This document shows positions 4,020 through 32,469 of a DNA stretch of 34,336 nt, piece by piece; the stretch's first letter is position 1, and the number at the start of each line of letters is the position of its first letter. The notes below the pieces were generated by a model. The model was given only the letters and a program-made list of their open reading frames with translations. It ran no database searches and had not been told where the DNA came from. Made by a program: the position numbers and the translations under genes. Source of the DNA: Octopus bimaculoides (taxonomy: Eukaryota). The stretch spans positions 24,873,016 through 24,907,351 of the forward strand of contig NC_068998.1 of the NCBI RefSeq assembly GCF_001194135.2, in the 5' to 3' direction.

Positions 4020-4860
4020 TATGCATCCATATATCCATTAAGTGTCGAAAGAAGAAAGATTTTGCAGAGGCGACAGAGCTTCTTCCAAAGAGGTAAGCCT
4101 GAAAAATTTGAAGAATTTTGAGAAAATGTTGAATAGATAAGGTGATGACGTGAAATTGTCACCACATCAAGAAGTTATAAGAAATATTGAAGAAAGGAAT
4201 ATAATCTATAAGGTATATTCAATTAAAGAAAAAAAGAATCGAAAGCGAACCTACGGAAGTAATAAGAAAGGCTTTGAGGCCAATCTGGCAAGATATGACA
4301 TATCTTGCCAGAGGAAGCTGATATGGAAAGGTGGACGAGCTTTTTAAAAATAAGGAAAAGACGAGGAAATACTCATGAAACACAATGCAGACAGAAAGGG
4401 TGATCTTCTTACCCACTACCTTGGAAGAAGAACTTCCAGAGTCAAGGTGAAGGGAATCACCCTTCAAATAGACATGGCTTGAGTGGCAGCGGCGGTGCTT
4501 CTAGGAAGTGAAAACGATGTAACCATGCTCCAATACACAGAGACGGAGTCCACAAACTGGGAAGGAAAGGTGCTAGGCATCATTATACAAAGATGGCGGA
4601 AACGGTGATAGTGGGAGAAACGGTGTTGGGAGTGTGGGTAGAGAGCAGAATCTCTCGTTGCTATAAATGTAGCCAAATGCGCCACATTACAGTGGACTGC
4701 CCACTAAAAAGCAACAAGGAAGTCCAGAATGAAGCTGAGGAGGAGAGAATGGAAATGGTAGAAATGACCAAGGAAGAAACATAGAAGGTCACGGGAGGAG
4801 GAAGACAGAGGAAGTGGAAGAAGACAGAGGAAGTGGAAGAAGAAAAGTCAATGTTAACTG
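4020..4860 (+). pseudogene. Decayed retroelement ORF1/gag-like fragment with CCHC zinc knuckle
   Basis: CYKCSQMRHITVDC at 4659-4700 fits CX2CX4HX4C. The upstream frame reads GRRTSRVKVKGITLQIDMA*VAAAVLLG with stops and frameshifts, and a charged low-complexity tail follows. Assignment to non-LTR ORF1 is inference; ends approximate. Confidence 0.65.
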
Positions 4861-6440: not shown

Positions 6441-8821
6441 ACGGGGCGGCTCGTCGAAGTGAGTACCACAATGAGATAGGCACCGCTGTTCGTGAAGTAT
6501 TCAAAATAATGTTAGCCGAAGTATGTTTGAAGTATCGTGCTGCTGGAATTATATTTCATGTTATCCCAGTGTTATTCATTGACTTCATTCTGAGAGACAG
6601 TGAATCGAAATATCTTGTGATGCCTTTAAGAGATGGATGTCAACATTCTTAGAGGAAAATTGGTTTAACAATTTCACGCCGATATAACTCACAGCTCAAA
6701 TCTGATTACACATCACTACTCTTCATATTCATAACCTTAAATTCTTGTTCTGCGTTGGATAACCATTTAAACTGAAATGTACTGGATGTCATACTGCAAA
6801 ACAAGTAAATTATGAACATTACGTTAAATTGTTAGGTAATACATGTAGCTAAATATCTTTTTAAAGAAATCATGAAATGCTGTCATTTATATAATGTTAA
6901 GTGAATTTTAAGTATCTTGATATTTTTTCATTGTCTTTGTAAGATTTCGCTTTATGCTGTCAATTCTGAAGACAATAACAGATATCATTGACAGAAAATG
7001 CTCGTTCAAGAAATATAACATTTGAGTTGAAGCCTGAGTAATATGAGTGAAAGGGACAATAGTACTATTGTAAATATCGCAGCTATCTTGTAAAGCGATA
7101 CATATCTATTACAATAAGAGTATACAGGCATCTTTATCTTGTAGCTCAATTTAAAATTCGTAATTTATTTAAATTCTAACTATACAGATGATGAAAATAA
7201 ATTAAGCCTTCACATTCTGATATTTAGAACTCTCATTAGATACATTAAGTCAAAGCTATAAGAACCACGAACAAAATCTAAATTTGAAAGTGCAAAATAG
7301 TTGAGAGGGTGACAGCTTTAATTAAAATCAGTATGTTTATTAGTAATATATCGGTGTTTGGGGGATGTAATTACGTAAAGGACAGCTAATACGTAGGAAT
7401 TCTACAAGCCTAGAGAATGTTACAGATACTAGACATAGCTGCTAATTTTGCTTTAAAGTTCAGTCATTACGGGGTTAAATTTATTTGACATTGGAACATA
7501 ACTGATGTGGTTAGTAACATTTCATTGCTTTCATCAGACTACATTTTGAAATAATTGTCAAATGAAATATATTCTGAGCACCATTAGGTAGCTTAATGCT
7601 CGTGTGACAGCAATGAAGTAACCAATAAATCAGTATTATAACTATTAGCTTTGTTTTATCAAGTACTAAAAGAAGATTGCTGATGCAAATCTCATCAGTA
7701 ATGCAGTCATTAATAGTAAAGCAGATTTAATCATGTGCAAACATTAAGAGTAGTTAAATGATACCTTGTGCAATACTCAAATATCCCACGTATGTTCTTT
7801 ATTGTTTAAATCAAATATACTGATCAGCACTTAGTGTTTCGCGTTAATGTATACATCATTCAGTGTTGTGTTACTGAGTTATACTGCTGTGTTGATTCTA
7901 ACTCGAAATATGATGGCACGTGCGTCTACCCATGGATTTATATCTAGCTTTAGCATCATGTGATATTTTAAACTTAAACTTCGTTCAACTTGTATTTAAA
8001 ACAATGATAATTTAAAACAATGATAATTTATGTAAGATGTTTTTTGTATATAATATACATGTTATTATAATGGATGAAGGGATGATTATTGAATGGTTAT
8101 TATTTTGATATTTTGATATTTTTTAAAATAATTCTTCTATCTTTATATAATAAGTATTTCATATTAATTCATTTGCTANNNNNNNNNNNNNNNNNNNNNN
8201 NNNNNNNNNNNNNNNNNNNNNNNNNNNNNNNNNNNNNNNNNNNNNNNNNNNNNNNNNNNNNNNNNNNNNNNNNNNNNNNNNNNNNNNNNNNNNNNNNNNN
8301 NNNNNNNNNNNNNNNNNNNNNNNNNNNNNNNNNNNNNNNNNNNNNNNNNNNNNNNNNNNNNNNNNNNNNNNNNNNNNNNNNNNNNNNNNNNNNNNNNNNN
8401 NNNNNNNNNNNNNNNNNNNNNNNNNNNNNNNNNNNNNNNNNNNNNNNNNNNNNNNNNNNNNNNNNNNNNNNNNNNNNNNNNNNNNNNNNNNNNNNNNNNN
8501 NNNNNNNNNNNNNNNNNNNNNNNNNNNNNNNNNNNNNNNNNNNNNNNNNNNNNNNNNNNNNNNNNNNNNNNNNNNNNNNNNNNNNNNNNNNNNNNNNNNN
8601 NNNNNNNNNNNNNNNNNNNNNNNNNNNNNNNNNNNNNNNNNNNNNNNNNNNNNNNNNNNNNNNNNNNNNNNNNNNNNNNNNNNNNNNNNNNNNNNNNNNN
8701 NNNNNNNNNNNNNNNNNNNNNNNNNNNNNNNNNNNNNNNNNNNNNNNNNNNNNNNNNNNNNNNNNNNNNNNNNNNNNNNNNNNNNNNNNNNNNNNNNNNN
8801 NNNNNNNNNNNNNNNNNNNNN

Positions 8822-8858
<37 letters not shown>

Positions 8859-8866
8859 ATAAATAA

Positions 8867-8904
<38 letters not shown>

Positions 8905-8940
8905 TGATAGATAGATAGATAGATAGATCGATAGATATAC
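8822..8940. repeat. (GATA)n microsatellite at gap edge
   Basis: Seen directly. Confidence 0.98.
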
Positions 8941-8951
8941 ATATATAAGTA

Positions 8952-10216
8952 CAGCCGTTAGACATAATAATGGAAACACATTAAAATTTCAAACAAATTT
9001 ATTTCAATATTGGAGTACGACCGCCTTTGACTGAAATTACAGCTTGAATTCTATAAAGTATGGACTCGCACAAAGTTCGAATTGTTTCCAAAGGAATTTT
9101 TGTCCATTCTTCAGCTAAAATAGGTTCCAGTTCTTGTAGTGATGATGGTGGAGGATATCGACTCGTTTCCTGTTTTTCTAAAATGCACCATAGATGTTCA
9201 AGAACGCTGCGATGTGGGGACTGTGGTGGCCAGATAAGATGTTCAACTTCACTAGAATGTTCCTCGTGCTATTCAGTAACAACTTTAGCTGTGTGAATTG
9301 GTTCATTATCATCCTGACAGATTGCGTTTTCCTCCGGAAACAGTTACGCAACCATAGGATGAATTTGATCAGATAAAATGCTTAAATAGTCTTCACTATT
9401 AATTCTGCCATGAAAGGAAACCATTAGGCAGGCGGATTTCCAAGAATTATCACCCCACCCCAGATCATTACAGATCCTCCTCCATGTTTAACAGTTGGAA
9501 GAAGGCAGTCTAGGTCAAATGCTTCTATCGGCTGTCTCCACACCTGTACTCGGTCAGTGGTGGCAAATAAAGTAAAGGATGAGTCATCCGAGAAAATAAC
9601 ATTCTTCCACTGCTCTAGGGACCAATTCTGTAGGTTTTTACTCCACTCTAAACACTTTGCAACTTTTGTTTTTGAAAGTAGTGGTTTTGTGATTGCAGCC
9701 CTCCCGTAAAATCCGGCTTTGTGCAGCTACCAGCGAAGAGTTTGTTTGGGGAACTGTGTTCTCGAGGTGGTCATTAAGCTCTGCAGTACTTTTAGGAGCT
9801 GTACTTTTGTGACCCTTTCTAACAATTCGCGTACGAGTCTGATAGTCGCTATCTGAAAGTTTAGGTTTTCTTCCGGAGTTTTGTTTCGACGAGGAGGTTT
9901 TTCCCTCTTTCTCAAAGGCTGTCACTACTTTCGAGACAGTATTTCTTGATACACCAAACATTTCGGTTGATTTCGTCACGCTAGCGCCTGCCATTCTAGA
10001 ACCAATAATTTGATTTCTTTGAAAGTCCGATAGATCTGTCATTTTAATGGATTTTTATTACCTTTTTCTGTTGATATCTGGAAAGAAACGGCAATTTTAG
10101 CAAAACAGATTAAGCAACACTAATAATAAAATAAATAAAAATGAACAAGTTTTATATATGCTTCAAAATTATGATGCTATGATCCTAGGTGTTTCCATTA
10201 TTTTGTCCAACTCCTG
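8952..10216 (-). mobile_element. Tc1/mariner-superfamily DNA transposon, full length, inactive, DD36E spacing
   Basis: TA at 8950-8951 and 10217-10218. TIRs 8952-8979 (cagccgttagacataataatggaaacac) and 10189-10216 (reverse complement caggagttggacaaaataatggaaacac) match at 24 of 28 positions. A transposase pseudogene lies inside. Confidence 0.95.
9004..10042 (-). pseudogene. Tc1-like transposase pseudogene, about 345 codons, with stops and frameshifts
   Basis: HTH N-terminus MTDLSDFQRNQIIG...GVSRNTVSKV...SGRKPKLS; WKNVIFSDDS (D1 at 9588-9586); TVKHGGGSVMIWG; QDDNEPIHTAK (D2 at 9310-9308); WPPQSPHRSVLEHLW (E at 9199-9197); C-terminal KGGRTP. Confidence 0.95.
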
Positions 10217-10218
10217 TA

Positions 10219-10246
10219 CATAAATATACGTATATATGCACACAAT

Positions 10247-10283
<37 letters not shown>

Positions 10284-10475
10284 CACACAGACATACACAT
10301 ACACACACACAGACGCACACACACACACACACATACATACACACACATATATACAGAAAGAGAGAAAGAAAGAGAGATAAACAGATAGCAGGATAGATAC
10401 ACTGATATCAACTAGTTCACATACATACACGCGTGCGCACACACACACACACGCACACACACACGCACACATGTA
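10219..10475. repeat. Compound CA/TA/GA microsatellite tract
   Basis: Seen directly; flanks the Tc1 element. Confidence 0.95.
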
Positions 10476-11730: not shown

Positions 11731-12440
11731 NNNNNNNNNNNNNNNNNNNNNNNNNNNNNNNNNNNNNNNNNNNNNNNNNNNNNNNNNNNNNNNNNNNNNN
11801 NNNNNNNNNNNNNNNNNNNNNNNNNNNNNNNNNNNNNNNNNNNNNNNNNNNNNNNNNNNNNNNNNNNNNNNNNNNNNNNNNNNNNNNNNNNNNNNNNNNN
11901 NNNNNNNNNNNNNNNNNNNNNNNNNNNNNNNNNNNNNNNNNNNNNNNNNNNNNNNNNNNNNNNNNNNNNNNNNNNNNNNNNNNNNNNNNNNNNNNNNNNN
12001 NNNNNNNNNNNNNNNNNNNNNNNNNNNNNNNNNNNNNNNNNNNNNNNNNNNNNNNNNNNNNNNNNNNNNNNNNNNNNNNNNNNNNNNNNNNNNNNNNNNN
12101 NNNNNNNNNNNNNNNNNNNNNNNNNNNNNNNNNNNNNNNNNNNNNNNNNNNNNNNNNNNNNNNNNNNNNNNNNNNNNNNNNNNNNNNNNNNNNNNNNNNN
12201 NNNNNNNNNNNNNNNNNNNNNNNNNNNNNNNNNNNNNNNNNNNNNNNNNNNNNNNNNNNNNNNNNNNNNNNNNNNNNNNNNNNNNNNNNNNNNNNNNNNN
12301 NNNNNNNNNNNNNNNNNNNNNNNNNNNNNNNNNNNNNNNNNNNNNNNNNNNNNNNNNNNNNNNNNNNNNNNNNNNNNNNNNNNNNNNNNNNNNNNNNNNN
12401 NNNNNNNNNNNNNNNNNNNNNNNNNNNNNNATATATATAT

Positions 12441-12910
12441 ACCCATAGGTATTCGTGCATACACCCACGATGTTACAACACAACCGACCAAATACCGTTA
12501 TGTGGGACCACAAAGTAAAGGTGTGTTCTCTTGTGGAAATCAGCTGTCCTTTGGACACGAATGTTAGAAAAATACAAGAGGAAGAGGACATCTATGGACC
12601 ATTGATAAAGAATTTGAAAATCCATTATCGAAGATACACTTTCAGCATCATACCCATTATTACTGTAGTAACAGGATACATACCAAGCTGTTTAGAGCAA
12701 ATTATGGCTGAAATTGAAATCTTGAGCAGAGAATGTAAATCCTTAATGCATACGCTACAAATGATCAGGATATCTGGGACAAATGAAATGTGCAAGGCCT
12801 TTTTAATGTTTAAAGGGTAACGGTTAAATCAAGATACGTTCTTTTATAACCTTGCTACCAAGTCGAAGGCCGGTTAGAATTTACTCTAAATTAAAAAAGT
12901 GAAAGAGAAG
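12441..12910 (+). mobile_element. 3' end of an RLE-bearing non-LTR retrotransposon (R4/NeSL-like): endonuclease domain plus short 3' UTR
   Basis: ORF 12455-12820: HNRPNTVMWD...VEISCP...YGPLI...IIPII..TGYIP...LQMIRISGT...KAFL. This fits the RPD-x(12-14)-E/D...K-Y restriction-like endonuclease pattern; the PD aspartate and the K are decayed. Clade is inference. Confidence 0.8.
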
Positions 12911-14288: not shown

Positions 14289-15289
14289 CTGAAAAGTTAT
14301 ATAATATGTGAGTTTATATGTGTTTTTCACACACACACAGACACACACACACGCACGCACGTACATATACTTATACAGGGTAGCACAAAAGTAGGTCTAC
14401 AGTTATTCAACTATCTCTCGCATTCATATATCAAGGGTTTAGATCTTAATTGTAAAAGAATATGAAAGCATTATTGTATGCTAGTTTAGTTACTTTCGTC
14501 AGGCTCCCTTTTCAGTTTGTAAGATAGAAATTTAAATGTAATAAGATGTTTTAGAAGAAACTTAAAGTGCCTACGTGATAACTGTATACCTACTTTTGGG
14601 ACACACACACACTCTCTCTCTCTCTCTCNNNNNNNNNNNNNNNNNNNNNNNNNNNNNNNNNNNNNNNNNNNNNNNNNNNNNNNNNNNNNNNNNNNNNNNN
14701 NNNNNNNNNNNNNNNNNNNNNNNNNNNNNNNNNNNNNNNNNNNNNNNNNNNNNNNNNNNNNNNNNNNNNNNNNNNNNNNNNNNNNNNNNNNNNNNNNNNN
14801 NNNNNNNNNNNNNNNNNNNNNNNNNNNNNNNNNNNNNNNNNNNNNNNNNNNNNNNNNNNNNNNNNNNNNNNNNNNNNNNNNNNNNNNNNNNNNNNNNNNN
14901 NNNNNNNNNNNNNNNNNNNNNNNNNNNNNNNNNNNNNNNNNNNNNNNNNNNNNNNNNNNNNNNNNNNNNNNNNNNNNNNNNNNNNNNNNNNNNNNNNNNN
15001 NNNNNNNNNNNNNNNNNNNNNNNNNNNNNNNNNNNNNNNNNNNNNNNNNNNNNNNNNNNNNNNNNNNNNNNNNNNNNNNNNNNNNNNNNNNNNNNNNNNN
15101 NATGGTGCTTTAATTATTGACATTTTTTTCTTCCGTTAGTGAATTGCTATACCGAAACCCGTTTGAACAAGTTTATCATTCTCGCATTTGTTTTCAATTT
15201 TGACTTTAAATTCAATAAGTATAATTCTAAGAAATGAATAGTCTGCACTCAATTTAGTTTGGTGCCTTCATCTGACAAATATATTGTGT

Positions 15290-16223: not shown

Positions 16224-17291
16224 TATATNNNNNNNNNNNNNNNNNNNNNNNNNNNNNNNNNNNNNNNNNNNNNNNNNNNNNNNNNNNNNNNNNNNNNNNN
16301 NNNNNNNNNNNNNNNNNNNNNNNNNNNNNNNNNNNNNNNNNNNNNNNNNNNNNNNNNNNNNNNNNNNNNNNNNNNNNNNNNNNNNNNNNNNNNNNNNNNN
16401 NNNNNNNNNNGATCTATATATAAACATACATATGAATGCATGTATCTATAGATAGATAGATATACCCAGATGTATATGTGTCTGTCAGTGTGTAGACCAA
16501 TTTAATTTATCAATACATTTATTATTTGTATTTTTGTAAAATATAAACTCTTCTGTAAATGGCTTAATATTTTGGAAAATTTAAATATCCCTTTTTGCAA
16601 TTTGTACTATGAAAATATATTCCCAATATGATTGTTATTCAATCAAGCGTTTCCATTCATATAATACAGCTTTTTTTAATTCTTACGTTTAATGTTGCCG
16701 TTGCAAGTCGAAAACTGGTAGCCGTGCTAGAGTGACAAAGAAAATTACTTTGAATAGGACATTGCAGTTCAATACCGAAGTGGTTCATATAGCCTCTCAC
16801 CTTTCGGTAGCAGTAAACAGTATAGCTGTATAGTATCAGTTTCCAAATTTCCCCCTGCCTTCTCCCCTTCGTTAATATCCGTTTGGATCATACCAGACAT
16901 TTTAAGATACATTCTTTTTTTCAAATTATGCCATAGAGATAAGGGCTCAGAATTTTGTTAAAAATACACAACCATGTGATTAAAAAAACAGCTGATTAAA
17001 AAAATTTATCACCGGTAGCAGTTAGTGTTAGAGTAATTAAAACAGAGTATCTCCGTTTTCCGGCGTATTGAGAGACCACCTGTGCTAACTTGTGTCAAAT
17101 TTGCCTTTCCTTTCTCCATTCGGTTAAATGCCAACTTCTTCAGCTGAAAACTATATAATTGTTACTACTCCCACCTCACTACCATGCTATGTATTTTTCT
17201 TCGAAGTAAATTAAAGGTATGGATTACTTGTCATAGAGTGGAGTAACTGAAACGATAAGGTCTATTAATACGTTTAATATTTCATAATTTC

Positions 17292-17815: not shown

Positions 17816-17949
17816 TGCACTCTGATAAATGCAAGCAAACAGAAACCTCGAATTTACTGTCAGCATTTTGCTTGTAAAAGTTAATACGTAAAAACATATT
17901 CATGGCTGTGAATATACATATGCTAGCATTGGAACGTACTCTCACAACT

Positions 17950-18460
17950 ATAAAGAGTGGTATTGAAATTGAAACCGACATCTTCTTCAAACCAACGGAC
18001 TCAAAACAATATCTTCTATTCTCCTCTTGCCACCCAAAACTTACTAAAATAAATATACCGTTCAACTTAGCGAAAAGAATTTCCACGATTGCATCAAATC
18101 CCAAAACCCGAGAAAAACGTCTCCAAGAACATAAAAACACATTACTGGATAGAAAATACCCGGCCAGTCTAATCAAAAATGGAATAGAACGTGCAAAAAT
18201 GATAAACATCCAAGAGTTACGGAAAACAAGAAAGCACCATGACACAATTAAAACTCTATCTTACGAATCAACACACAATCCAAGAAACATGGAAGCATAC
18301 AACATCATCCACTAAAACATACCCCTCCTTATGAAGGACCCGCGAATGAAAAAGGCACTGGAAACATAGGATTATTAAAAGCTAGTTACAACCGCTATCC
18401 TTAAATAAACTACTCACCAGCGCCAAATTACCCACCAAAAATACAACCCCACAAGTCAAA
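17950..18460 (+). mobile_element. Penelope-like element fragment (reverse transcriptase thumb/linker region), runs into gap
   Basis: IETDIFFKPTDSKQYLLFSSCHPKLTKINIPFNLAKRISTI...RLQE....LLDRKYP...I..GIERAK...YESTHNP matches the Penelope TDxxxKPTD...YLxxxSxHP...IP motif. Stops accumulate downstream. Confidence 0.9.
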
Positions 18461-19272
18461 NNNNNNNNNNNNNNNNNNNNNNNNNNNNNNNNNNNNNNNN
18501 NNNNNNNNNNNNNNNNNNNNNNNNNNNNNNNNNNNNNNNNNNNNNNNNNNNNNNNNNNNNNNNNNNNNNNNNNNNNNNNNNNNNNNNNNNNNNNNNNNNN
18601 NNNNNNNNNNNNNNNNNNNNNNNNNNNNNNNNNNNNNNNNNNNNNNNNNNNNNNNNNNNNNNNNNNNNNNNNNNNNNNNNNNNNNNNNNNNNNNNNNNNN
18701 NNNNNNNNNNNNNNNNNNNNNNNNNNNNNNNNNNNNNNNNNNNNNNNNNNNNNNNNNNNNNNNNNNNNNNNNNNNNNNNNNNNNNNNNNNNNNNNNNNNN
18801 NNNNNNNNNNNNNNNNNNNNNNNNNNNNNNNNNNNNNNNNNNNNNNNNNNNNNNNNNNNNNNNNNNNNNNNNNNNNNNNNNNNNNNNNNNNNNNNNNNNN
18901 NNNNNNNNNNNNNNNNNNNNNNNNNNNNNNNNNNNNNNNNNNNNNNNNNNNNNNNNNNNNNNNNNNNNNNNNNNNNNNNNNNNNNNNNNNNNNNNNNNNN
19001 NNNNNNNNNNNNNNNNNNNNNNNNNNNNNNNNNNNNNNNNNNNNNNNNNNNNNNNNNNNNNNNNNNNNNNNNNNNNNNNNNNNNNNNNNNNNNNNNNNNN
19101 NNNNNNNNNNNNNNNNNNNNNNNNNNNNNNNNNNNNNNNNNNNNNNNNNNNNNNNNNNNNNNNNNNNNNNNNNNNNNNNNNNNNNNNNNNNNNNNNNNNN
19201 NNNNNNNNNNNNNNNNNNNNNNNNNNNNNNNNNNNNNNNNNNNTATATATATATATATATATATACATATAT

Positions 19273-24239: not shown

Positions 24240-24647
24240 ACATTTATGTATGCGCGTGTGCGTGTGTGCGTGTGTGAGAGGAAGAGCGAGTGAGTGAGTG
24301 AGTGAGAGAAGGGGTGTGTTGTCTTGTATACGTACATACATAAATATATATGCACACAACTTTTTTGTGTGTATGTGTGGGTGTGTGAGAGAGACAAAGG
24401 GATATATATATGTATATNNNNNNNNNNNNNNNNNNNNNNNNNNNNNNNNNNNNNNNNNNNNNNNNNNTATATATATAGATAGATAGATAGATAGATATAT
24501 ATATATAGAGAGAGAGGGAGCGAGAGGGGGAGAGAGAGAGGGAGAGAGAGAGAATGAAGTCTAACTGGCACTCTATCTCTCTCACACACACATACAAAAA
24601 AGATGTATGCATATCCATTTCTGTATGTACGTATACATGACAACACT

Positions 24648-24842: not shown

Positions 24843-27116
24843 TCAATATACACTCTTATGCAGAAAGGCAGTGAGCAGATAAATAAAAATGATGAAGTTG
24901 CAGGATATGACAGAGGAAGATACACCAGTACTAATGAGGAGGTTTTGGGTGTATCTTCAATTTTACCCTTCAGGAGAGGCACCCAACCATCATTCATCTG
25001 AGTGTTCGTCTAGAGAATGGCCACAGGGTTATCTTTACAAAACAAACTGCTTGTAACAAGCACTTTCTCCAGAAGAAACTACCCTTATTGCCTTTTTTTA
25101 AAGTTATGTCAAGTAGATGAAGATGCAAGAAAACTCCCTTACCCATAATTACCCAAGTATTACACCTGGAAAAACAATAAATGGTGCAAGAGGAAACGTG
25201 GTGCTGACACCCTTGCAAGAGTTTACAGCGTCCACCCAAGCCAAGCAGAATGCTACTACTTACGACTCTTTTAGTATGAAGGACGTGGTCCCAAATTATT
25301 GCAAGATTTGAGGAGAGTAAGTGGTTGTGTGTGTGAAACTTATAAGGAAGTATGCTATCAACATAGTTTTTTAGAACATGATGAGCATTGAGACCTTGCA
25401 TTGACTGAAGCATCAGTATCAGATTCTCCAAGGAAACTAAGTAACCTTTTTTGCAATTATACTGAATATGTGTGAACGTGGCAGTCCCCTACAGCTTTAG
25501 ATGAAACATCGTGAGGACATGGCTGAGGACTGAAATTATGCAGGCAAACCCCAAAATCAATATTAAGTTCTGTGAACTTAATATTGTCCTTTTTAACCAA
25601 ACACTGATTGAAATTGTGAATTAAGGTTTGTCCATGGGAGGCAAAAAATTGCATTTTTTTATCTCGACTGTGAAAAATAGATTCTTAAATTAGTGATTTA
25701 TCTTCAAGAGACATAACAAGAGAGACAAATTATGACATCACAGAGTTGGCTGCATTTGCGAATGAACATGAACCTAAATTTCATCCAGAACAACGCTGTG
25801 CGTATGATAGATTTATTTCATCAGTCAGAGAAAAATGCAGAGGAATTTTCTCTCTTGATGCTCCTGGGGACACTTTTGTAACAACATTGCTTCTCTCCAA
25901 GGTAAGGCGACAAAAAGGAATTGCAGTTGCTGTAGCATCGTCATCGTCTGGAATTGCTGCTACCCGTCTCCCAGGAGGACGAACAGCTCATTCTGCTTTT
26001 AAATTACCGTTAAATCTGGTCACAAATAACAGTTCAATTTGTAACATAAGCAAAGGTTCAAGTTCAGCAAAAGTGTTGCGCCAATGCCACTTGATCATTT
26101 GGGATGAATACACCATGTCACATAGAGGTGCAAGGAATCTCTGTATCAAACTTCACAGGACATAAGAGCCAACAATAAATCTATCGGGGGAGTTACATAA
26201 GTTTTAACAGGAGACTTCAGAGAGGCATTACCAGTCATTCCAAAAGCATGCATTAAGTCTTCACACTTATGGAATANNNNNNNNNNNNNNNNNNNNNNNN
26301 NNNNNNNNNNNNNNNNNNNNNNNNNNNNNNNNNNNNNNNNNNNNNNNNNNNNNNNNNNNNNNNNNNNNNNNNNNNNNNNNNNNNNNNNNNNNNNNNNNNN
26401 NNNNNNNNNNTCCAATCAAGAAATGGCAAAGTACCATTTGATGGGAATGGTGATTTCAATTTGGCTCATATTGCTATCATCGTGAATTCCACAGCTGAAT
26501 TGAAGAACAGGATATTTCTAGACTTAAGTAATAATTATAATTCACATAAATGGTTGTGTGAAAAGGCAATTCTTGCTAAAAATGAGACAGTAGCAAGGAT
26601 TAGCCATGAATTAGCTGATTCAGTCCTTGATGAAAATCAAGCTGTCTATTACCGAAGAGAATTCCTTAATTCTCTTGAGCCACATGAAATTCCTCCACAT
26701 AAATTTTTTCTTAAGGTGGGAGTCCTAATAATACTTCTAAGTAACTTAGATCTTCTTAAATTATGCAATGGGACAAGGTTGATTGTGAAGGCATAATCAC
26801 CTAATGTGATAGAGGTTACCATCATCACTGGATGTGCCCCTGGGAAAGAAGTTTTCCAGGACTTCAAATCAAACCAAAAGATGTGCCATTTGAGTTCACA
26901 TGAACTCAATTCTTAGAGCAAATTTGCTTTGCAATGTCTATTAATAAAACTCAAGTTCAGAATTTGAAATCTACTGACTTGCACGTAACTGAGCCTTGCT
27001 TTTCTCATGGTCAACATTATGCTATTTGCTCCGGGATTGGTAGTTTGCAAGTCTTATTTGTCTATACTCCATACCAGAAAACAAAGAATGTTGTTTACCC
27101 AGAAGCTCTTAGGTAA
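24843..27116 (+). mobile_element. Helitron Rep/PIF1-helicase pseudogene, 5'-truncated, with internal gap
   Basis: Rep C-terminus: SIYTLMQKGSEQ, DEVAGYDRGRYTSTNE, ERHPTIIHLSVRLENG, ETTLIAFF. Helicase motifs: LDAPG.TF, AVASS..GIAATRLPGGRTAHSAFKLPL, IIWDEYTMSH, VLTGDFREALPVIP, LCNGTRLIV, FAMSINKTQVQ, FSHGQHY. Typical end KTKNVVYPEAL*. Many frameshifts and stops. Confidence 0.96.
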
Positions 27117-27669
27117 TTTGCTTCAACAAATGTGATAGAGTTTATTTCCCTTCATAAAAGTGGTAAATTTTGTATATTTGTTTATTATTATCATTATTAT
27201 TATTATTAGTAGTAGTGGTAGTAGTAGTATGAATTCGGAATTGATTTCCCAGTTGAAAAATAGATTGTATCCTAATTGAAGAATATATTGAATTTAAACT
27301 AACAAATTNNNNNNNNNNNNNNNNNNNNNNNNNNNNNNNNNNNNNNNNNNNNNNNNNNNNNNNNNNNNNNNNNNNNNNNNNNNNNNNNNTATATATATAT
27401 ATATTTGTGTGTGTGCGCGCGCGTTGTGTGTATGTATGTATGTATGTTCACGTAATCTCTAGCTTAATGGGTGTTGCAAAACCTCATAATGATGTCGCAG
27501 TTACTTCTAGTCTATAGCTCAGCATCGTACTTCAAAACGGTGCGACGTGCTGTGAGGACAGTATCATTTCTAGTATGATCAGTTGCAAGTGATTTGTTTT
27601 AGCAAGATATGGGGAAGTGCTAGAATAATAGTTATAAATATTGACTTGCATAAATTTACTTTTATCTGT

Positions 27670-30369: not shown

Positions 30370-31026
30370 NNNNNNNNNNNNNNNNNNNNNNNNNNNNNNN
30401 NNNNNNNNNNNNNNNNNNNNNNNNNNNNNNNNNNNNNNNNNNNNNNNNNNNNNNNNNNNNNNNNNNNNNNNNNNNNNNNNNNNNNNNNNNNNNNNNNNNN
30501 NNNNNNNNNNNNNNNNNNNNNNNNNNNNNNNNNNNNNNNNNNNNNNNNNNNNNNNNNNNNNNNNNNNNNNNNNNNNNNNNNNNNNNNNNNNNNNNNNNNN
30601 NNNNNNNNNNNNNNNNNNNNNNNNNNNNNNNNCTAGAAATCTATAGTAGTAACAAGATACAGATTAAGGAACTAAGGAAGAATAGAATTATGAAACATGA
30701 ACTAATTTCAATAGCGAATTCTGACCATTTTTCTGTGGTAGAATTTGAATTGAAGAATAAATTTCCCGTACATTATTTTTTCATTCGTTGTTTTTGCTTT
30801 AATATTCATATGTATGTTTTATACTAAATATTTCATGTTTCTTTGATTTCAATATTTAGATTTGTGGTTAACATTAACTGACAACTCAACAAGAAAGTGA
30901 TATATTTCTTTTGAACATTAACTTTCATAGCAACTCAATTCTCGTTATCTTCTCAATGTTGATTCACATAAGCACAAACACACGCAAACAATTTCTTTTA
31001 TATATGTGTATGTTTCTTCTTTTACT

Positions 31027-31305: not shown

Positions 31306-32469
31306 NNNNNNNNNNNNNNNNNNNNNNNNNNNNNNNNNNNNNNNNNNNNNNNNNNNNNNNNNNNNNNNNNNNNNNNNNNNNNNNNNNNNNNNNNNNNNNN
31401 NNNNNNNNNNNNNNNNNNNNNNNNNNNNNNNNNNNNNNNNNNNNNNNNNNNNNNNNNNNNNNNNNNNNNNNNNNNNNNNNNNNNNNNNNNNNNNNNNNNN
31501 NNNNNNNNNNNNNNNNNNNNNNNNNNNNNNNNNNNNNNNNNNNNNNNNNNNNNNNNNNNNNNNNNNNNNNNNNNNNNNNNNNNNNNNNNNNNNNNNNNNN
31601 NNNNNNNNNNNNNNNNNNNNNNNNNNNNNNNNNNNNNNNNNNNNNNNNNNNNNNNNNNNNNNNNNNNNNNNNNNNNNNNNNNNNNNNNNNNNNNNNNNNA
31701 TATATATAGATATATATATATATATATATGCATACATACACGCACGGACATAAACACACACATACGCATGGGCTCACGCGTTCCTCCACATATACACACA
31801 CTCACATTTATATAAGATGACATTCTGCAAGTTTCAGTTGCGAAATTTCACTCATAAGTATTAGTCAACCGAAAGAGTCTGTTGGCGTTGCTAGCCTAAA
31901 CTATATTAATCTACTACTCTTCTTCTGTGGATACTTTTGTTTGCGGAGATACTTATGGTTTTCTACAGAGAAGGCAAGTTTGTATTAGATTGTAATACAA
32001 ACAACAAAGTACCAGAATTGCAGAGGCAGATACTCTTGTCAGACAGACAATTTGTAGTGGAGATAAGTACAGAGAATGTAAAAGAGATAAAACAATGTAT
32101 GCTACAGAATAGGTTGAAGACAATTGCACCTGCCACAGATAATGACGTCACCTTAATCGATAGAGGCGGAAATATTCAAAAACAGAAGAACAGAAATGGC
32201 GAAAGAAACAAATGAATTACACAGACAACCAAATACTTCTTGATAAATAGCATTAGTGGGAAGGACAGAATAACTGGTATAGAAAGGAGCAGAGAAACGA
32301 GATTGAAAAAAAAAAAAAACATGAAAAGTAAATGTAGCAAACTTTTAAATTTTGCCCTCGGAATTGATATTCTTTAACCTGGCATTCTAATGGGGTCAGT
32401 CAGAAAATAGATCTCCTTTAAGCAGAACAAAAGGTGCCCACGCGCAAGGATAATTCCTTCCCCAGTAAC

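What the first reader, a model, noticed from the sequence alone, without database searches (positions are those of the whole stretch)
8950..10218. Complete Tc1-like transposon with DD36E spacing in an apparent cephalopod genome
Seen: exactly 36 codons separate D2 (9310-9308) from E (9199-9197) in an unbroken frame, against 34 in canonical Tc1. The element is 1265 bp with 28-bp TIRs, a TA TSD and an ORF of about 345 codons. Known: these dimensions match the DD36E 'Incomer' family, which as I recall was reported mainly from vertebrates plus a few arthropods and is linked to horizontal transfer. Inference: a mollusc copy would extend the host range or represent an independent two-residue insertion.
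Basis: partly seen in the sequence, partly recalled or inferred. Interest (0 to 1): 0.7.

Follow-up and report, generated by a model that had tools for sequence, protein, structure and literature searches.

The report
Dead Incomer-like DD36E Tc1 transposon copy
This is a full-length but mutationally dead copy of a cut-and-paste Tc1-like transposon from a widespread animal family, related to the known 'Incomer' family and sharing its unusual catalytic spacing, so it modestly extends a known family's host range and is not a new kind of element.

Summary
Exactly 36 codons separate D2 (9310-9308) from E (9199-9197).

It is not complete. The longest ORF is 134 aa. Reading the roughly 345-codon transposase requires correcting two frameshifts and three in-frame stops, and one TAG lies inside the D-to-E interval.

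The 36 spacing is a family trait. Every measurable relative (45-77% identity, about 30 proteins) has it, including an Octopus bimaculoides fragment and intact 343-aa copies with perfect TIRs from marine and other assemblies.

The family is not one of the published Incomer clusters. It has FQDDNAPIH/VKHGGGS where the references have FQQDNAPCH/VQAGGGG. It groups as their sister, with the same D(90)D(36)E spacing and the 2-residue insertion in the same column. In a 133-sequence tree, 36 of 37 DD36E sequences form one clade, but bootstrap support is weak.

A cephalopod host is plausible but unproven. The bivalve DD36E elements (TLEWI) are a different group.

Verdict: an ordinary decayed transposon and a new member of a known kind.

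The parts
10217..10218 (-). TA target-site duplication at the 5' end of the element
   Evidence: Read directly from the sequence. TA also flanks the TIRs of relatives L004-L007.
10189..10216 (-). 5' terminal inverted repeat, 28 nt: CAGGAGTTGGACAAAATAATGGAAACAC
   Evidence: It has 1 mismatch to the family consensus CAGGGGTTGGACAAAATAATGGAAACAC, with 0 matches expected by chance.
10043..10188 (-). 5' untranslated region between the TIR and the ATG
   Evidence: The ATG at 10042 aligns with the start codon of intact relatives.
9752..10042 (-). Coding segment A, residues 1-97: N-terminal DNA-binding region with helix-turn-helix motifs and the GRKPK motif
   Evidence: tblastn against P0002 gives 71% identity. 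Pfam HTH_23 E = 0.00036, below the curated cut-off, and HTH_Tnp_Tc3_2 E = 4.5e-8.
9745..9751 (-). Frameshift 1: 7 nt where relatives have 6, in a C/A homopolymer run
   Evidence: The reading frame changes between tblastn segments; the sequence is.
9451..9744 (-). Coding segment B, about residues 100-197, holding the in-frame TAG at 9729-9727 and the first catalytic D at 9588-9586 (FSDDSSF)
   Evidence: D152 aligns with the SDE motif of all relatives.
9453..9462 (-). Frameshift 2: tandem TGGGG/TGGGG, read as a 5-nt duplication inside the conserved MIWG motif
   Evidence: tblastn segments in frames +1 and +3 overlap here; sequence. The duplication itself is inferred.
9002..9457 (-). Coding segment C, about residues 194-345: rest of the DDE domain, with TAA at 9346-9344, D2 at 9310-9308, TAG at 9271-9269 and E at 9197-9199
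   Evidence: Pfam DDE_3 E = 9.6e-8.
8999..9001 (-). Stop codon TAA ending the transposase frame, two codons later than in relatives
8952..8979 (-). 3' terminal inverted repeat, 28 nt, with 4 mismatches to the 5' TIR
8950..8951 (-). TA target-site duplication at the 3' end of the element
   Evidence: Read directly from the sequence.

Best explanation
The region is one old, full-length but inactivated insertion of a Tc1/mariner cut-and-paste DNA transposon.

How intact members of the family work (inferred from established Tc1/mariner biochemistry): they are about 1265-1272 bp and encode a 343-aa transposase. The transposase's N-terminal paired-like helix-turn-helix domain binds the 28-bp terminal inverted repeats. 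Its DDE domain, spaced D(90)D(36)E, excises the element and inserts it at a TA dinucleotide, which becomes duplicated.

This copy inserted into TA-rich microsatellite DNA. It then decayed by two frameshifts, three premature stops and substitutions in conserved motifs. It can no longer make transposase. At best it could be moved in trans by an intact relative, and its degraded 3' TIR makes even that unlikely.

The family carries the DD36E spacing as an ancestral trait shared with the published Incomer (DD36E/IC) family. It appears to be a separate, sister lineage of Incomer. It occurs in crustaceans, fish, frogs, spiders and octopus.
For: Anatomy:
- TA plus 28-nt TIRs at both ends, 1265 bp.
- Pfam HTH_Tnp_Tc3_2 and DDE_3.

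Relatives:
- There are 93 relatives. Intact 343-aa proteins share 67-72% identity, and a copy 88% identical at the nucleotide level exists (L002).
- L006 is a 1276-bp contig made of TA, perfect 28-nt TIRs and an intact 343-aa ORF. The same TIR flanked by TA occurs in L001, L002, L004, L005 and L007.

Decay: frameshifts and stops were mapped by tblastn.

Spacing:
- It is 36 in every measurable relative and 34 or 38 in more distant hits.
- The triad is D152/D243/E280, that is D(90)D(36)E. The window element, P0002, P0004 and the Incomer element of Pygocentrus nattereri (IC_Pyna) all share this spacing.
- The 2-residue insertion is in the same alignment columns as in Incomer.

Relationship to Incomer:
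- In the 48-sequence NJ tree the family is monophyletic at 96%, the Incomer references at 98%, and family plus Incomer against all else at 94%.
- Full-length P0002 against IC_Pyna gives 45.7% identity and 327 bits. Against DD34E- and DD38E-type transposases it gives 158-232 bits.
- An Incomer HMM outscores a DD34E HMM by 10-30 bits (typically about 20) for every family member.
- In the 133-sequence tree, built with unbiased nearest representatives, 36 of 37 DD36E sequences form one clade that contains no non-DD36E sequence. The insertion columns were not used for the distances.

Octopus: the O. bimaculoides fragment shares subfamily-specific residues with the window copy.
Against: - With dense sampling the DD36E clade has weak bootstrap support. 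The exact clade is recovered in 30% of replicates, and 52% have no non-DD36E taxon inside the common-ancestor clade of family plus Incomer.
- Only neighbour-joining was available. Named references for DD35E/Traveler, DD38E/Intruder, DD37E/TRT and TLEWI were not in the tree.
- The family lacks Incomer's FQQDNAPCH and VQAGGGG motifs. It has VKHGGGS as in DD34E elements, and some near neighbours with QDDNAPVH have 34 or 35 spacing.
- Identity to the Incomer references (45-51% in the DDE domain) is below the range seen within Incomer (53-62%).
- No transposition activity was tested, and no other copy from the host genome could be examined.
Confidence: 0.8

Rival explanations
1. The DD36E spacing arose independently by a two-residue insertion in a DD34E Tc1 lineage. 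On this reading the family is not specifically related to Incomer, and the resemblance in size and spacing is convergent.
For: - Bootstrap support for the DD36E clade is weak under dense sampling (30% and 52%).
- The family keeps the DD34E-like VKHGGGS motif. Its near neighbours with QDDNAPVH have 34 or 35 spacing.
- One DD36E sequence (P0316) lies outside the clade, so the spacing can arise more than once.
- Puzakov et al. note that spacer length alone cannot delimit families (10.1101/656579).
Against: - The insertion is in the same columns as in Incomer, with similar sequence there: EH(S/D)xE(F/V).
- The D1-D2 spacing of 90 is identical.
- The N-terminal motif DLSDF(E/Q)RG..VGAR is shared with Incomer.
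- The two are reciprocally closest by bit score.
- 36 of 36 clade members are DD36E, although the insertion columns were excluded from the distances.
Confidence: 0.15
2. The window is not from a cephalopod, so no mollusc host-range extension exists. The element would then sit in a crustacean, fish or other animal genome where this family is already present in databases.
For: - No host gene was identified in the window.
- The closest full-length relatives come from unnamed metagenome or read-archive assemblies. The named full-length ones are from an amphipod.
- The look-up of the window's own ORF found no record.
Against: - The best named hit of the element (74% over the DDE C-terminal part) and of the unrelated PIF1-like helicase fragment (56%) are both O. 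bimaculoides.
- The window copy and the O. bimaculoides fragment share subfamily-specific residues (YLSILSDQIH, MVAELF, AKVVTEWH, EHSSE) that the amphipod, fish and frog copies lack.
- The 35% GC content and heavy microsatellite load fit octopus genomes. This last point is from my own knowledge and was not tested.
Confidence: 0.2
3. The element is a recently transferred or still mobile copy, as the reader's link to horizontal transfer implies.
For: - Other subfamilies show near-identical transposases across an amphipod, a fish, a frog and a stomatopod.
- Intact copies with perfect TIRs exist elsewhere.
Against: - This copy has 2 frameshifts, 3 stops and 4 TIR mismatches.
- Its K2P distance to its nearest known relative is 0.12.
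- There is no second copy in the 34-kb window.
Confidence: 0.03

Closest known systems
DD36E/Incomer (IC) family of Tc1/mariner transposons (Sang et al. 2019, PMC6875036)
   Same: - D(90)D(36)E spacing, with the 2-residue insertion in the same alignment columns.
- About 1.2-1.27 kb long, a 343-346 aa single-ORF transposase, 28-bp TIRs and a TA duplication.
- The N-terminal DLSDFxRG..VGAR motif.
- Reciprocally best bit scores and sister position in the trees.
   Different: - None of the published Incomer alignments contains the family's NAPIH or VKHGGGS motifs; NIIEH occurs in only one reference, Xenocatantops brachycerus.
- DDE-domain identity to Incomer references is 45-51%, against 53-62% within Incomer.
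- The Incomer references form their own clade (98%) that excludes this family.
- The fish Incomer TIR shares only 14 of 28 positions.
- Published Incomer hosts are vertebrates, insects and arachnids, with no molluscs or crustaceans.
TLEWI, the DD36E Tc1-like elements with introns of bivalve molluscs (Puzakov et al., bioRxiv 10.1101/656579)
   Same: A mollusc host and DD36E spacing in a Tc1-like transposase.
   Different: [quoted passage not shown]
- They were reported absent from cephalopods and gastropods.
- The element here has TIRs and is colinear with uninterrupted 343-aa ORFs.
- No bivalve protein appeared among its 93 homologues.
Canonical DD34E Tc1 elements (Sleeping Beauty, Passport, Frog Prince, Quetzal)
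   Same: The same superfamily architecture, TA target, CAG-initiated TIRs and the PTVKHGGGS motif.
   Different: - Two residues fewer between D2 and E.
- About 40% DDE-domain identity.
- FQQDNDPKH instead of FQDDNAPIH.

Membership tests
Tc1/mariner superfamily (Tc1-like) | TA target-site duplication flanking terminal inverted repeats | tested here: met
   TA at 8950-8951 and 10217-10218; 28-nt TIRs, 24/28 complementary.
Tc1/mariner superfamily (Tc1-like) | Transposase with a paired-like HTH DNA-binding domain and a DDE catalytic domain | tested here: met
   Pfam HTH_Tnp_Tc3_2 (E = 4.5e-8) and DDE_3 (E = 9.6e-8) on the frame-corrected translation. D152, D243 and E280 align with the triad of the references.
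DD36E/Incomer | 36 residues between the second D and the E | tested here: met
   36 in the window copy and in all measurable relatives.
DD36E/Incomer | About 1.2 kb total length, a single ORF of about 346 aa (range 335-382), TIRs of 22-32 bp, TA duplication | tested here: met
   1265 bp here and about 1272 bp in the intact L006; 343-aa ORFs in relatives; 28-bp TIRs. Criteria are from PMC6875036.
DD36E/Incomer | Phylogenetic placement in a clade with Incomer, separate from DD34E and other families | tested here: inconclusive
   Family plus Incomer is supported at 94% with 48 sequences. With 133 sequences all members of the recovered clade are DD36E, but bootstrap is 30% for the exact clade and 52% for purity. 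Neighbour-joining only.
DD36E/Incomer | Falls within one of the four published clusters A-D | tested here: not met
   The 12 Incomer references, drawn from frogs, fishes, a hagfish, insects and spiders, are monophyletic (98%) to the exclusion of the family. The family's motifs are absent from the published Incomer alignments, apart from one NIIEH in Xenocatantops.
TLEWI (bivalve DD36E) | Spliceosomal introns in the transposase gene and absence of TIRs | tested here: not met
   TIRs are present. The coding region is colinear with uninterrupted 343-aa ORFs of relatives.
DD34E/Tc1 sensu stricto | 34 residues between the second D and the E | tested here: not met
   36 here; the DD34E references and outgroup hits have 34 in the same alignment.
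DD37E families (TRT, Mosquito, L18) | 37-residue spacing, which would require the first D of QDDN to be catalytic | tested here: not met
   By alignment, the D followed by N is homologous to the catalytic D of the Sleeping Beauty, Mos1 and Incomer references. The first D occupies their Q/H position. This was not tested biochemically.

The most novel reading that the evidence does not exclude
The family may be an unnamed, deep-branching sister lineage of Incomer (in effect a fifth DD36E cluster) that the 2019 survey missed. On this reading it is spread across crustaceans, teleosts, frogs, spiders and octopods. Some subfamilies are at least 90% identical in protein between an amphipod, a fish and a frog, and intact copies with perfect TIRs occur in ocean metagenomes. 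That would point to ongoing cross-phylum horizontal transfer in marine food webs and to a candidate naturally active transposon. The octopus copy would be an old relic of one such invasion.
Probability: 0.4. Interest if true: 0.4.

Novelty: new member of a known kind. Interest (0 to 1): 0.27.

Why it matters
The finding adds a cephalopod, and crustaceans via the relatives found, to the hosts of DD36E Tc1-like transposons. It also indicates that the DD36E group is broader than the four published Incomer clusters. This is useful for transposon classification and repeat annotation in cephalopod genomes, where Tc1 elements are counted only at superfamily level (PMC8967140). It does not change how these elements are understood to work, and this copy is non-functional. 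Intact relatives such as L006 could interest groups looking for naturally active transposons.

Tried and rejected
- Host identification by exact look-up of the window's ORF and of the O. bimaculoides chimeric protein found nothing on record.
- A second protein search with the PIF1-like fragment gave O. bimaculoides as the best named hit, but at only 56%. A third search, with the ORF at 12449-12817, found nothing.
- The sample accessions of the closest contigs are not mentioned in any held paper.
- A JGI metagenome scan with P0008 found no relative.
- I tested whether a virus might carry the element. The TIR 20-mer occurs in three IMG/VR contigs, but they hold no transposase and no full TIR, so these are chance A-rich matches.
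- I tested whether L002 is the orthologous locus. The alignment runs past the TIR only because both flanks are TA-rich microsatellites.
- There is no second copy or MITE of the element in the window.
- I looked for Traveler (DD35E) and Intruder (DD38E) reference sequences in paper supplements. The family's motifs are absent there, but I could not extract the reference sequences for the tree.
- A Biopython bootstrap run timed out and was replaced by my own NJ code.

Full report
**1. What is in the sequence**

The element reads on the minus strand. It starts TA|CAGGAGTTGGACAAAATAATGGAAACAC at 10218 and ends GTGTTTCCATTATTATGTCTAACGGCTG|TA at 8950. That gives a 1265-bp element (10216-8952) with 28-nt terminal inverted repeats, 24 of 28 complementary, and a TA on each side. 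The consensus TIR of the family matches the window once within three mismatches. None is expected in 100 shuffles.

The flanks are microsatellites: (GATA)29 at 8822-8937 and (CA)55 at 10239-10347. The immediate insertion site is TA-rich.

**2. The coding region is broken**

- The longest ORF is 134 aa (9638-10042).
- tblastn with intact relatives maps three frame segments: 10042-9752, 9744-9451 and 9457-9002.
- The segments are joined by a +1 frameshift at 9751-9745 and a second shift at 9462-9453, where TGGGG is tandemly repeated.
- In-frame stops lie at 9729-9727, 9346-9344 and 9271-9269.
- The frame-corrected translation has 345 codons and matches Pfam HTH_Tnp_Tc3_2 and DDE_3.
- D1 is at 9588-9586, D2 at 9310-9308 and E at 9199-9197.
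- The motif before E reads SPHRSVLE instead of the family's SPDLNIIE.

The words 'complete', 'unbroken' and 'ORF of about 345 codons' are not.

**3. The spacing is a family trait**

A protein search returned 93 relatives.

- Intact 343-aa proteins share 67-72% identity with the window copy.
- One copy shares 77% protein identity and 88% nucleotide identity (L002).
- Spider proteins share about 45%.
- A fragment embedded in an Octopus bimaculoides gene model shares 74%.

In every relative where the motifs could be located, about 30 proteins including the octopus fragment, the spacing is 36. Hits at 34% identity or less have 34 or 38.

The D followed by N aligns with the catalytic D of the Sleeping Beauty, Mos1 and Incomer references. 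The first D of QDDN replaces their Q. By homology the triad is therefore D(90)D(36)E, not DD37E.

**4. Intact members exist**

- L006 is a 1276-bp contig made of TA, two identical 28-nt TIRs and an open 343-aa frame.
- L004, L005 (a TARA ocean metagenome scaffold) and L007 carry the same TIR with flanking TA.
- The family unit is therefore about 1265-1272 bp, and the window copy is a full-length relic.
- Its K2P distance to the nearest known copy is 0.12.

**5. Relation to known families**

The Incomer paper (PMC6875036) defines DD36E/IC as follows:

- about 1.2 kb long;
- a transposase of about 346 aa;
- TIRs of 22-32 bp and a TA duplication;
- found in vertebrates, four insects and nine arachnids, with no mollusc.

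Its published alignments read FQQDNAPCH, VQAGGGGVMVWG and LNPIEH. None contains the NAPIH or VKHGGGS motifs of this family. NIIEH occurs in one reference only, Xenocatantops brachycerus. The Intruder supplement lacks NAPIH and LNIIEH. The Traveler supplement lacks NAPIH, NIIEH and the N-terminal DLSDF motif.

Evidence that the family is nevertheless related to Incomer:

- In a 48-sequence neighbour-joining tree of the DDE domain, the family is monophyletic at 96%. The twelve Incomer references are monophyletic at 98%. The two together separate from DD34E, DD38E-type, mariner, maT and DD41D sequences at 94%.
- Full-length P0002 scores 327 bits (45.7% identity) against the Incomer element of Pygocentrus nattereri. 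It scores 158-232 bits against DD34E- and DD38E-type proteins, and the preference is reciprocal.
- An Incomer profile outscores a DD34E profile by 10-30 bits (typically about 20) for every family member. The two extra residues fall in the same alignment columns.
- D1-D2 spacing is 90 in both.

To avoid biased sampling I ran the exhaustive representative search with P0002. I then rebuilt the tree with 85 unselected full-length neighbours, 133 sequences in all.

- The neighbourhood is a continuum of Tc1-like lineages with 32, 34, 35, 36 and 38 spacing.
- The tree recovers one clade holding 36 of the 37 DD36E sequences and no other sequence. The insertion columns had been excluded from the distances.
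- Bootstrap support is weak. The exact clade appears in 30% of replicates. In 52% of replicates the common-ancestor clade of family plus Incomer contains no non-DD36E taxon.

My reading is that the family belongs to a broader DD36E group together with Incomer, as a separate sister lineage. This is likely but not settled. Neighbour-joining was the only method available.

**6. Molluscs**

DD36E Tc1-like elements are already described in molluscs. These are TLEWI, known from pteriomorph bivalves. They lack TIRs, have introns, carry YQDNDSKH, and were reported absent from cephalopods. They are a different group.

Cephalopod repeat surveys count TcMar-Tc1 only at superfamily level. In the held literature I found no report of a DD36E element in a cephalopod.

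**7. Host**

- No host gene was found in the window.
- The best named hits of two independent transposable elements, this one and a PIF1-like helicase fragment at 25689-26162, are both O. bimaculoides.
- The window copy, the O. bimaculoides fragment and P0008 share residues that other subfamilies lack: YLSILSDQ, MVAELF, VTEWH and EHSSE.

A cephalopod, probably octopod, host is therefore plausible but not shown.

**8. Mechanism**

Shown here: the anatomy of a Tc1/mariner element, and its inactivation.

Inferred from the established biochemistry of the superfamily: intact relatives move by transposase binding to the TIRs, DDE-catalysed excision and insertion at TA. This copy cannot supply transposase, and its diverged 3' TIR makes it a poor substrate.

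**9. Verdict**

This is an ordinary decayed transposon insertion. The novelty is limited to a host-range extension and a probable additional DD36E lineage beside Incomer.

Noticed in passing
window 25689-26162 and 26411-26796 (+): Two ORF fragments of a PIF1-like helicase (Pfam PIF1 E = 2.9e-23; Pif1_2B_dom E = 1.3e-12), separated by an assembly gap. This is probably a decayed Helitron-type element. The best named relative is O. bimaculoides at 56% identity.
   Followed up: partly
proteins P0007, P0127, P0129, P0003, P0045, P0053: Another subfamily of the same DD36E family appears in very different hosts. An intact 343-aa copy in the amphipod Trinorchestia longiramus is nearly identical to a metagenome copy. 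Fragments from the fish Sphaeramia orbicularis fall in the same 90%-identity cluster. Fragments also occur in the frog Dendrobates tinctorius and the stomatopod Oratosquilla oratoria. The pattern suggests horizontal transfer, or contamination.
   Followed up: partly
proteins P0265, P0268, P0273 and others (top): The highest-scoring proteins in the exhaustive search are 600-1360-aa proteins containing two to five tandem Tc1-like transposase units. Their motif is YQQDNARPHTA...PDLSPIEHVW, with an apparent spacing of only 32 residues by my pattern match. Fused or concatenated transposases with an unusual spacing were not examined further.
   Followed up: no
window 17878-18312 (+): An open 145-aa frame containing FKPTDSKQYLLFSSCHP. 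From memory this motif resembles retroelement-encoded proteins. It has no Pfam match at E <= 0.01.
   Followed up: partly
window 12449-12817 (+): An open 123-aa frame next to an assembly gap, with no Pfam match and no homologue in the word-indexed protein search.
   Followed up: partly
window 4512-4781 (+): A 90-aa frame with a CCHC-like zinc-knuckle pattern (CYKCSQMRHITVDC), possibly a remnant of a retroelement gag. It has no Pfam match at E <= 0.01.
   Followed up: partly
window, ten N runs (8179-8821, 11731-12430, 14629-15101, 16229-16410, 18461-19243, 24418-24467, 26277-26410, 27309-27389, 30370-30632, 31306-31699): The window is a gapped scaffold with 35% GC and very dense di- and tetranucleotide microsatellites. 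One gap ends 130 bp from the element's 3' end.
   Followed up: no
L001 2160-4015: In a 15.6-kb long-read contig, a copy of the same DD36E family lies between two ORFs with piggyBac-type DDE_Tnp_1_7 matches. This suggests a nested insertion into a piggyBac-like element.
   Followed up: no
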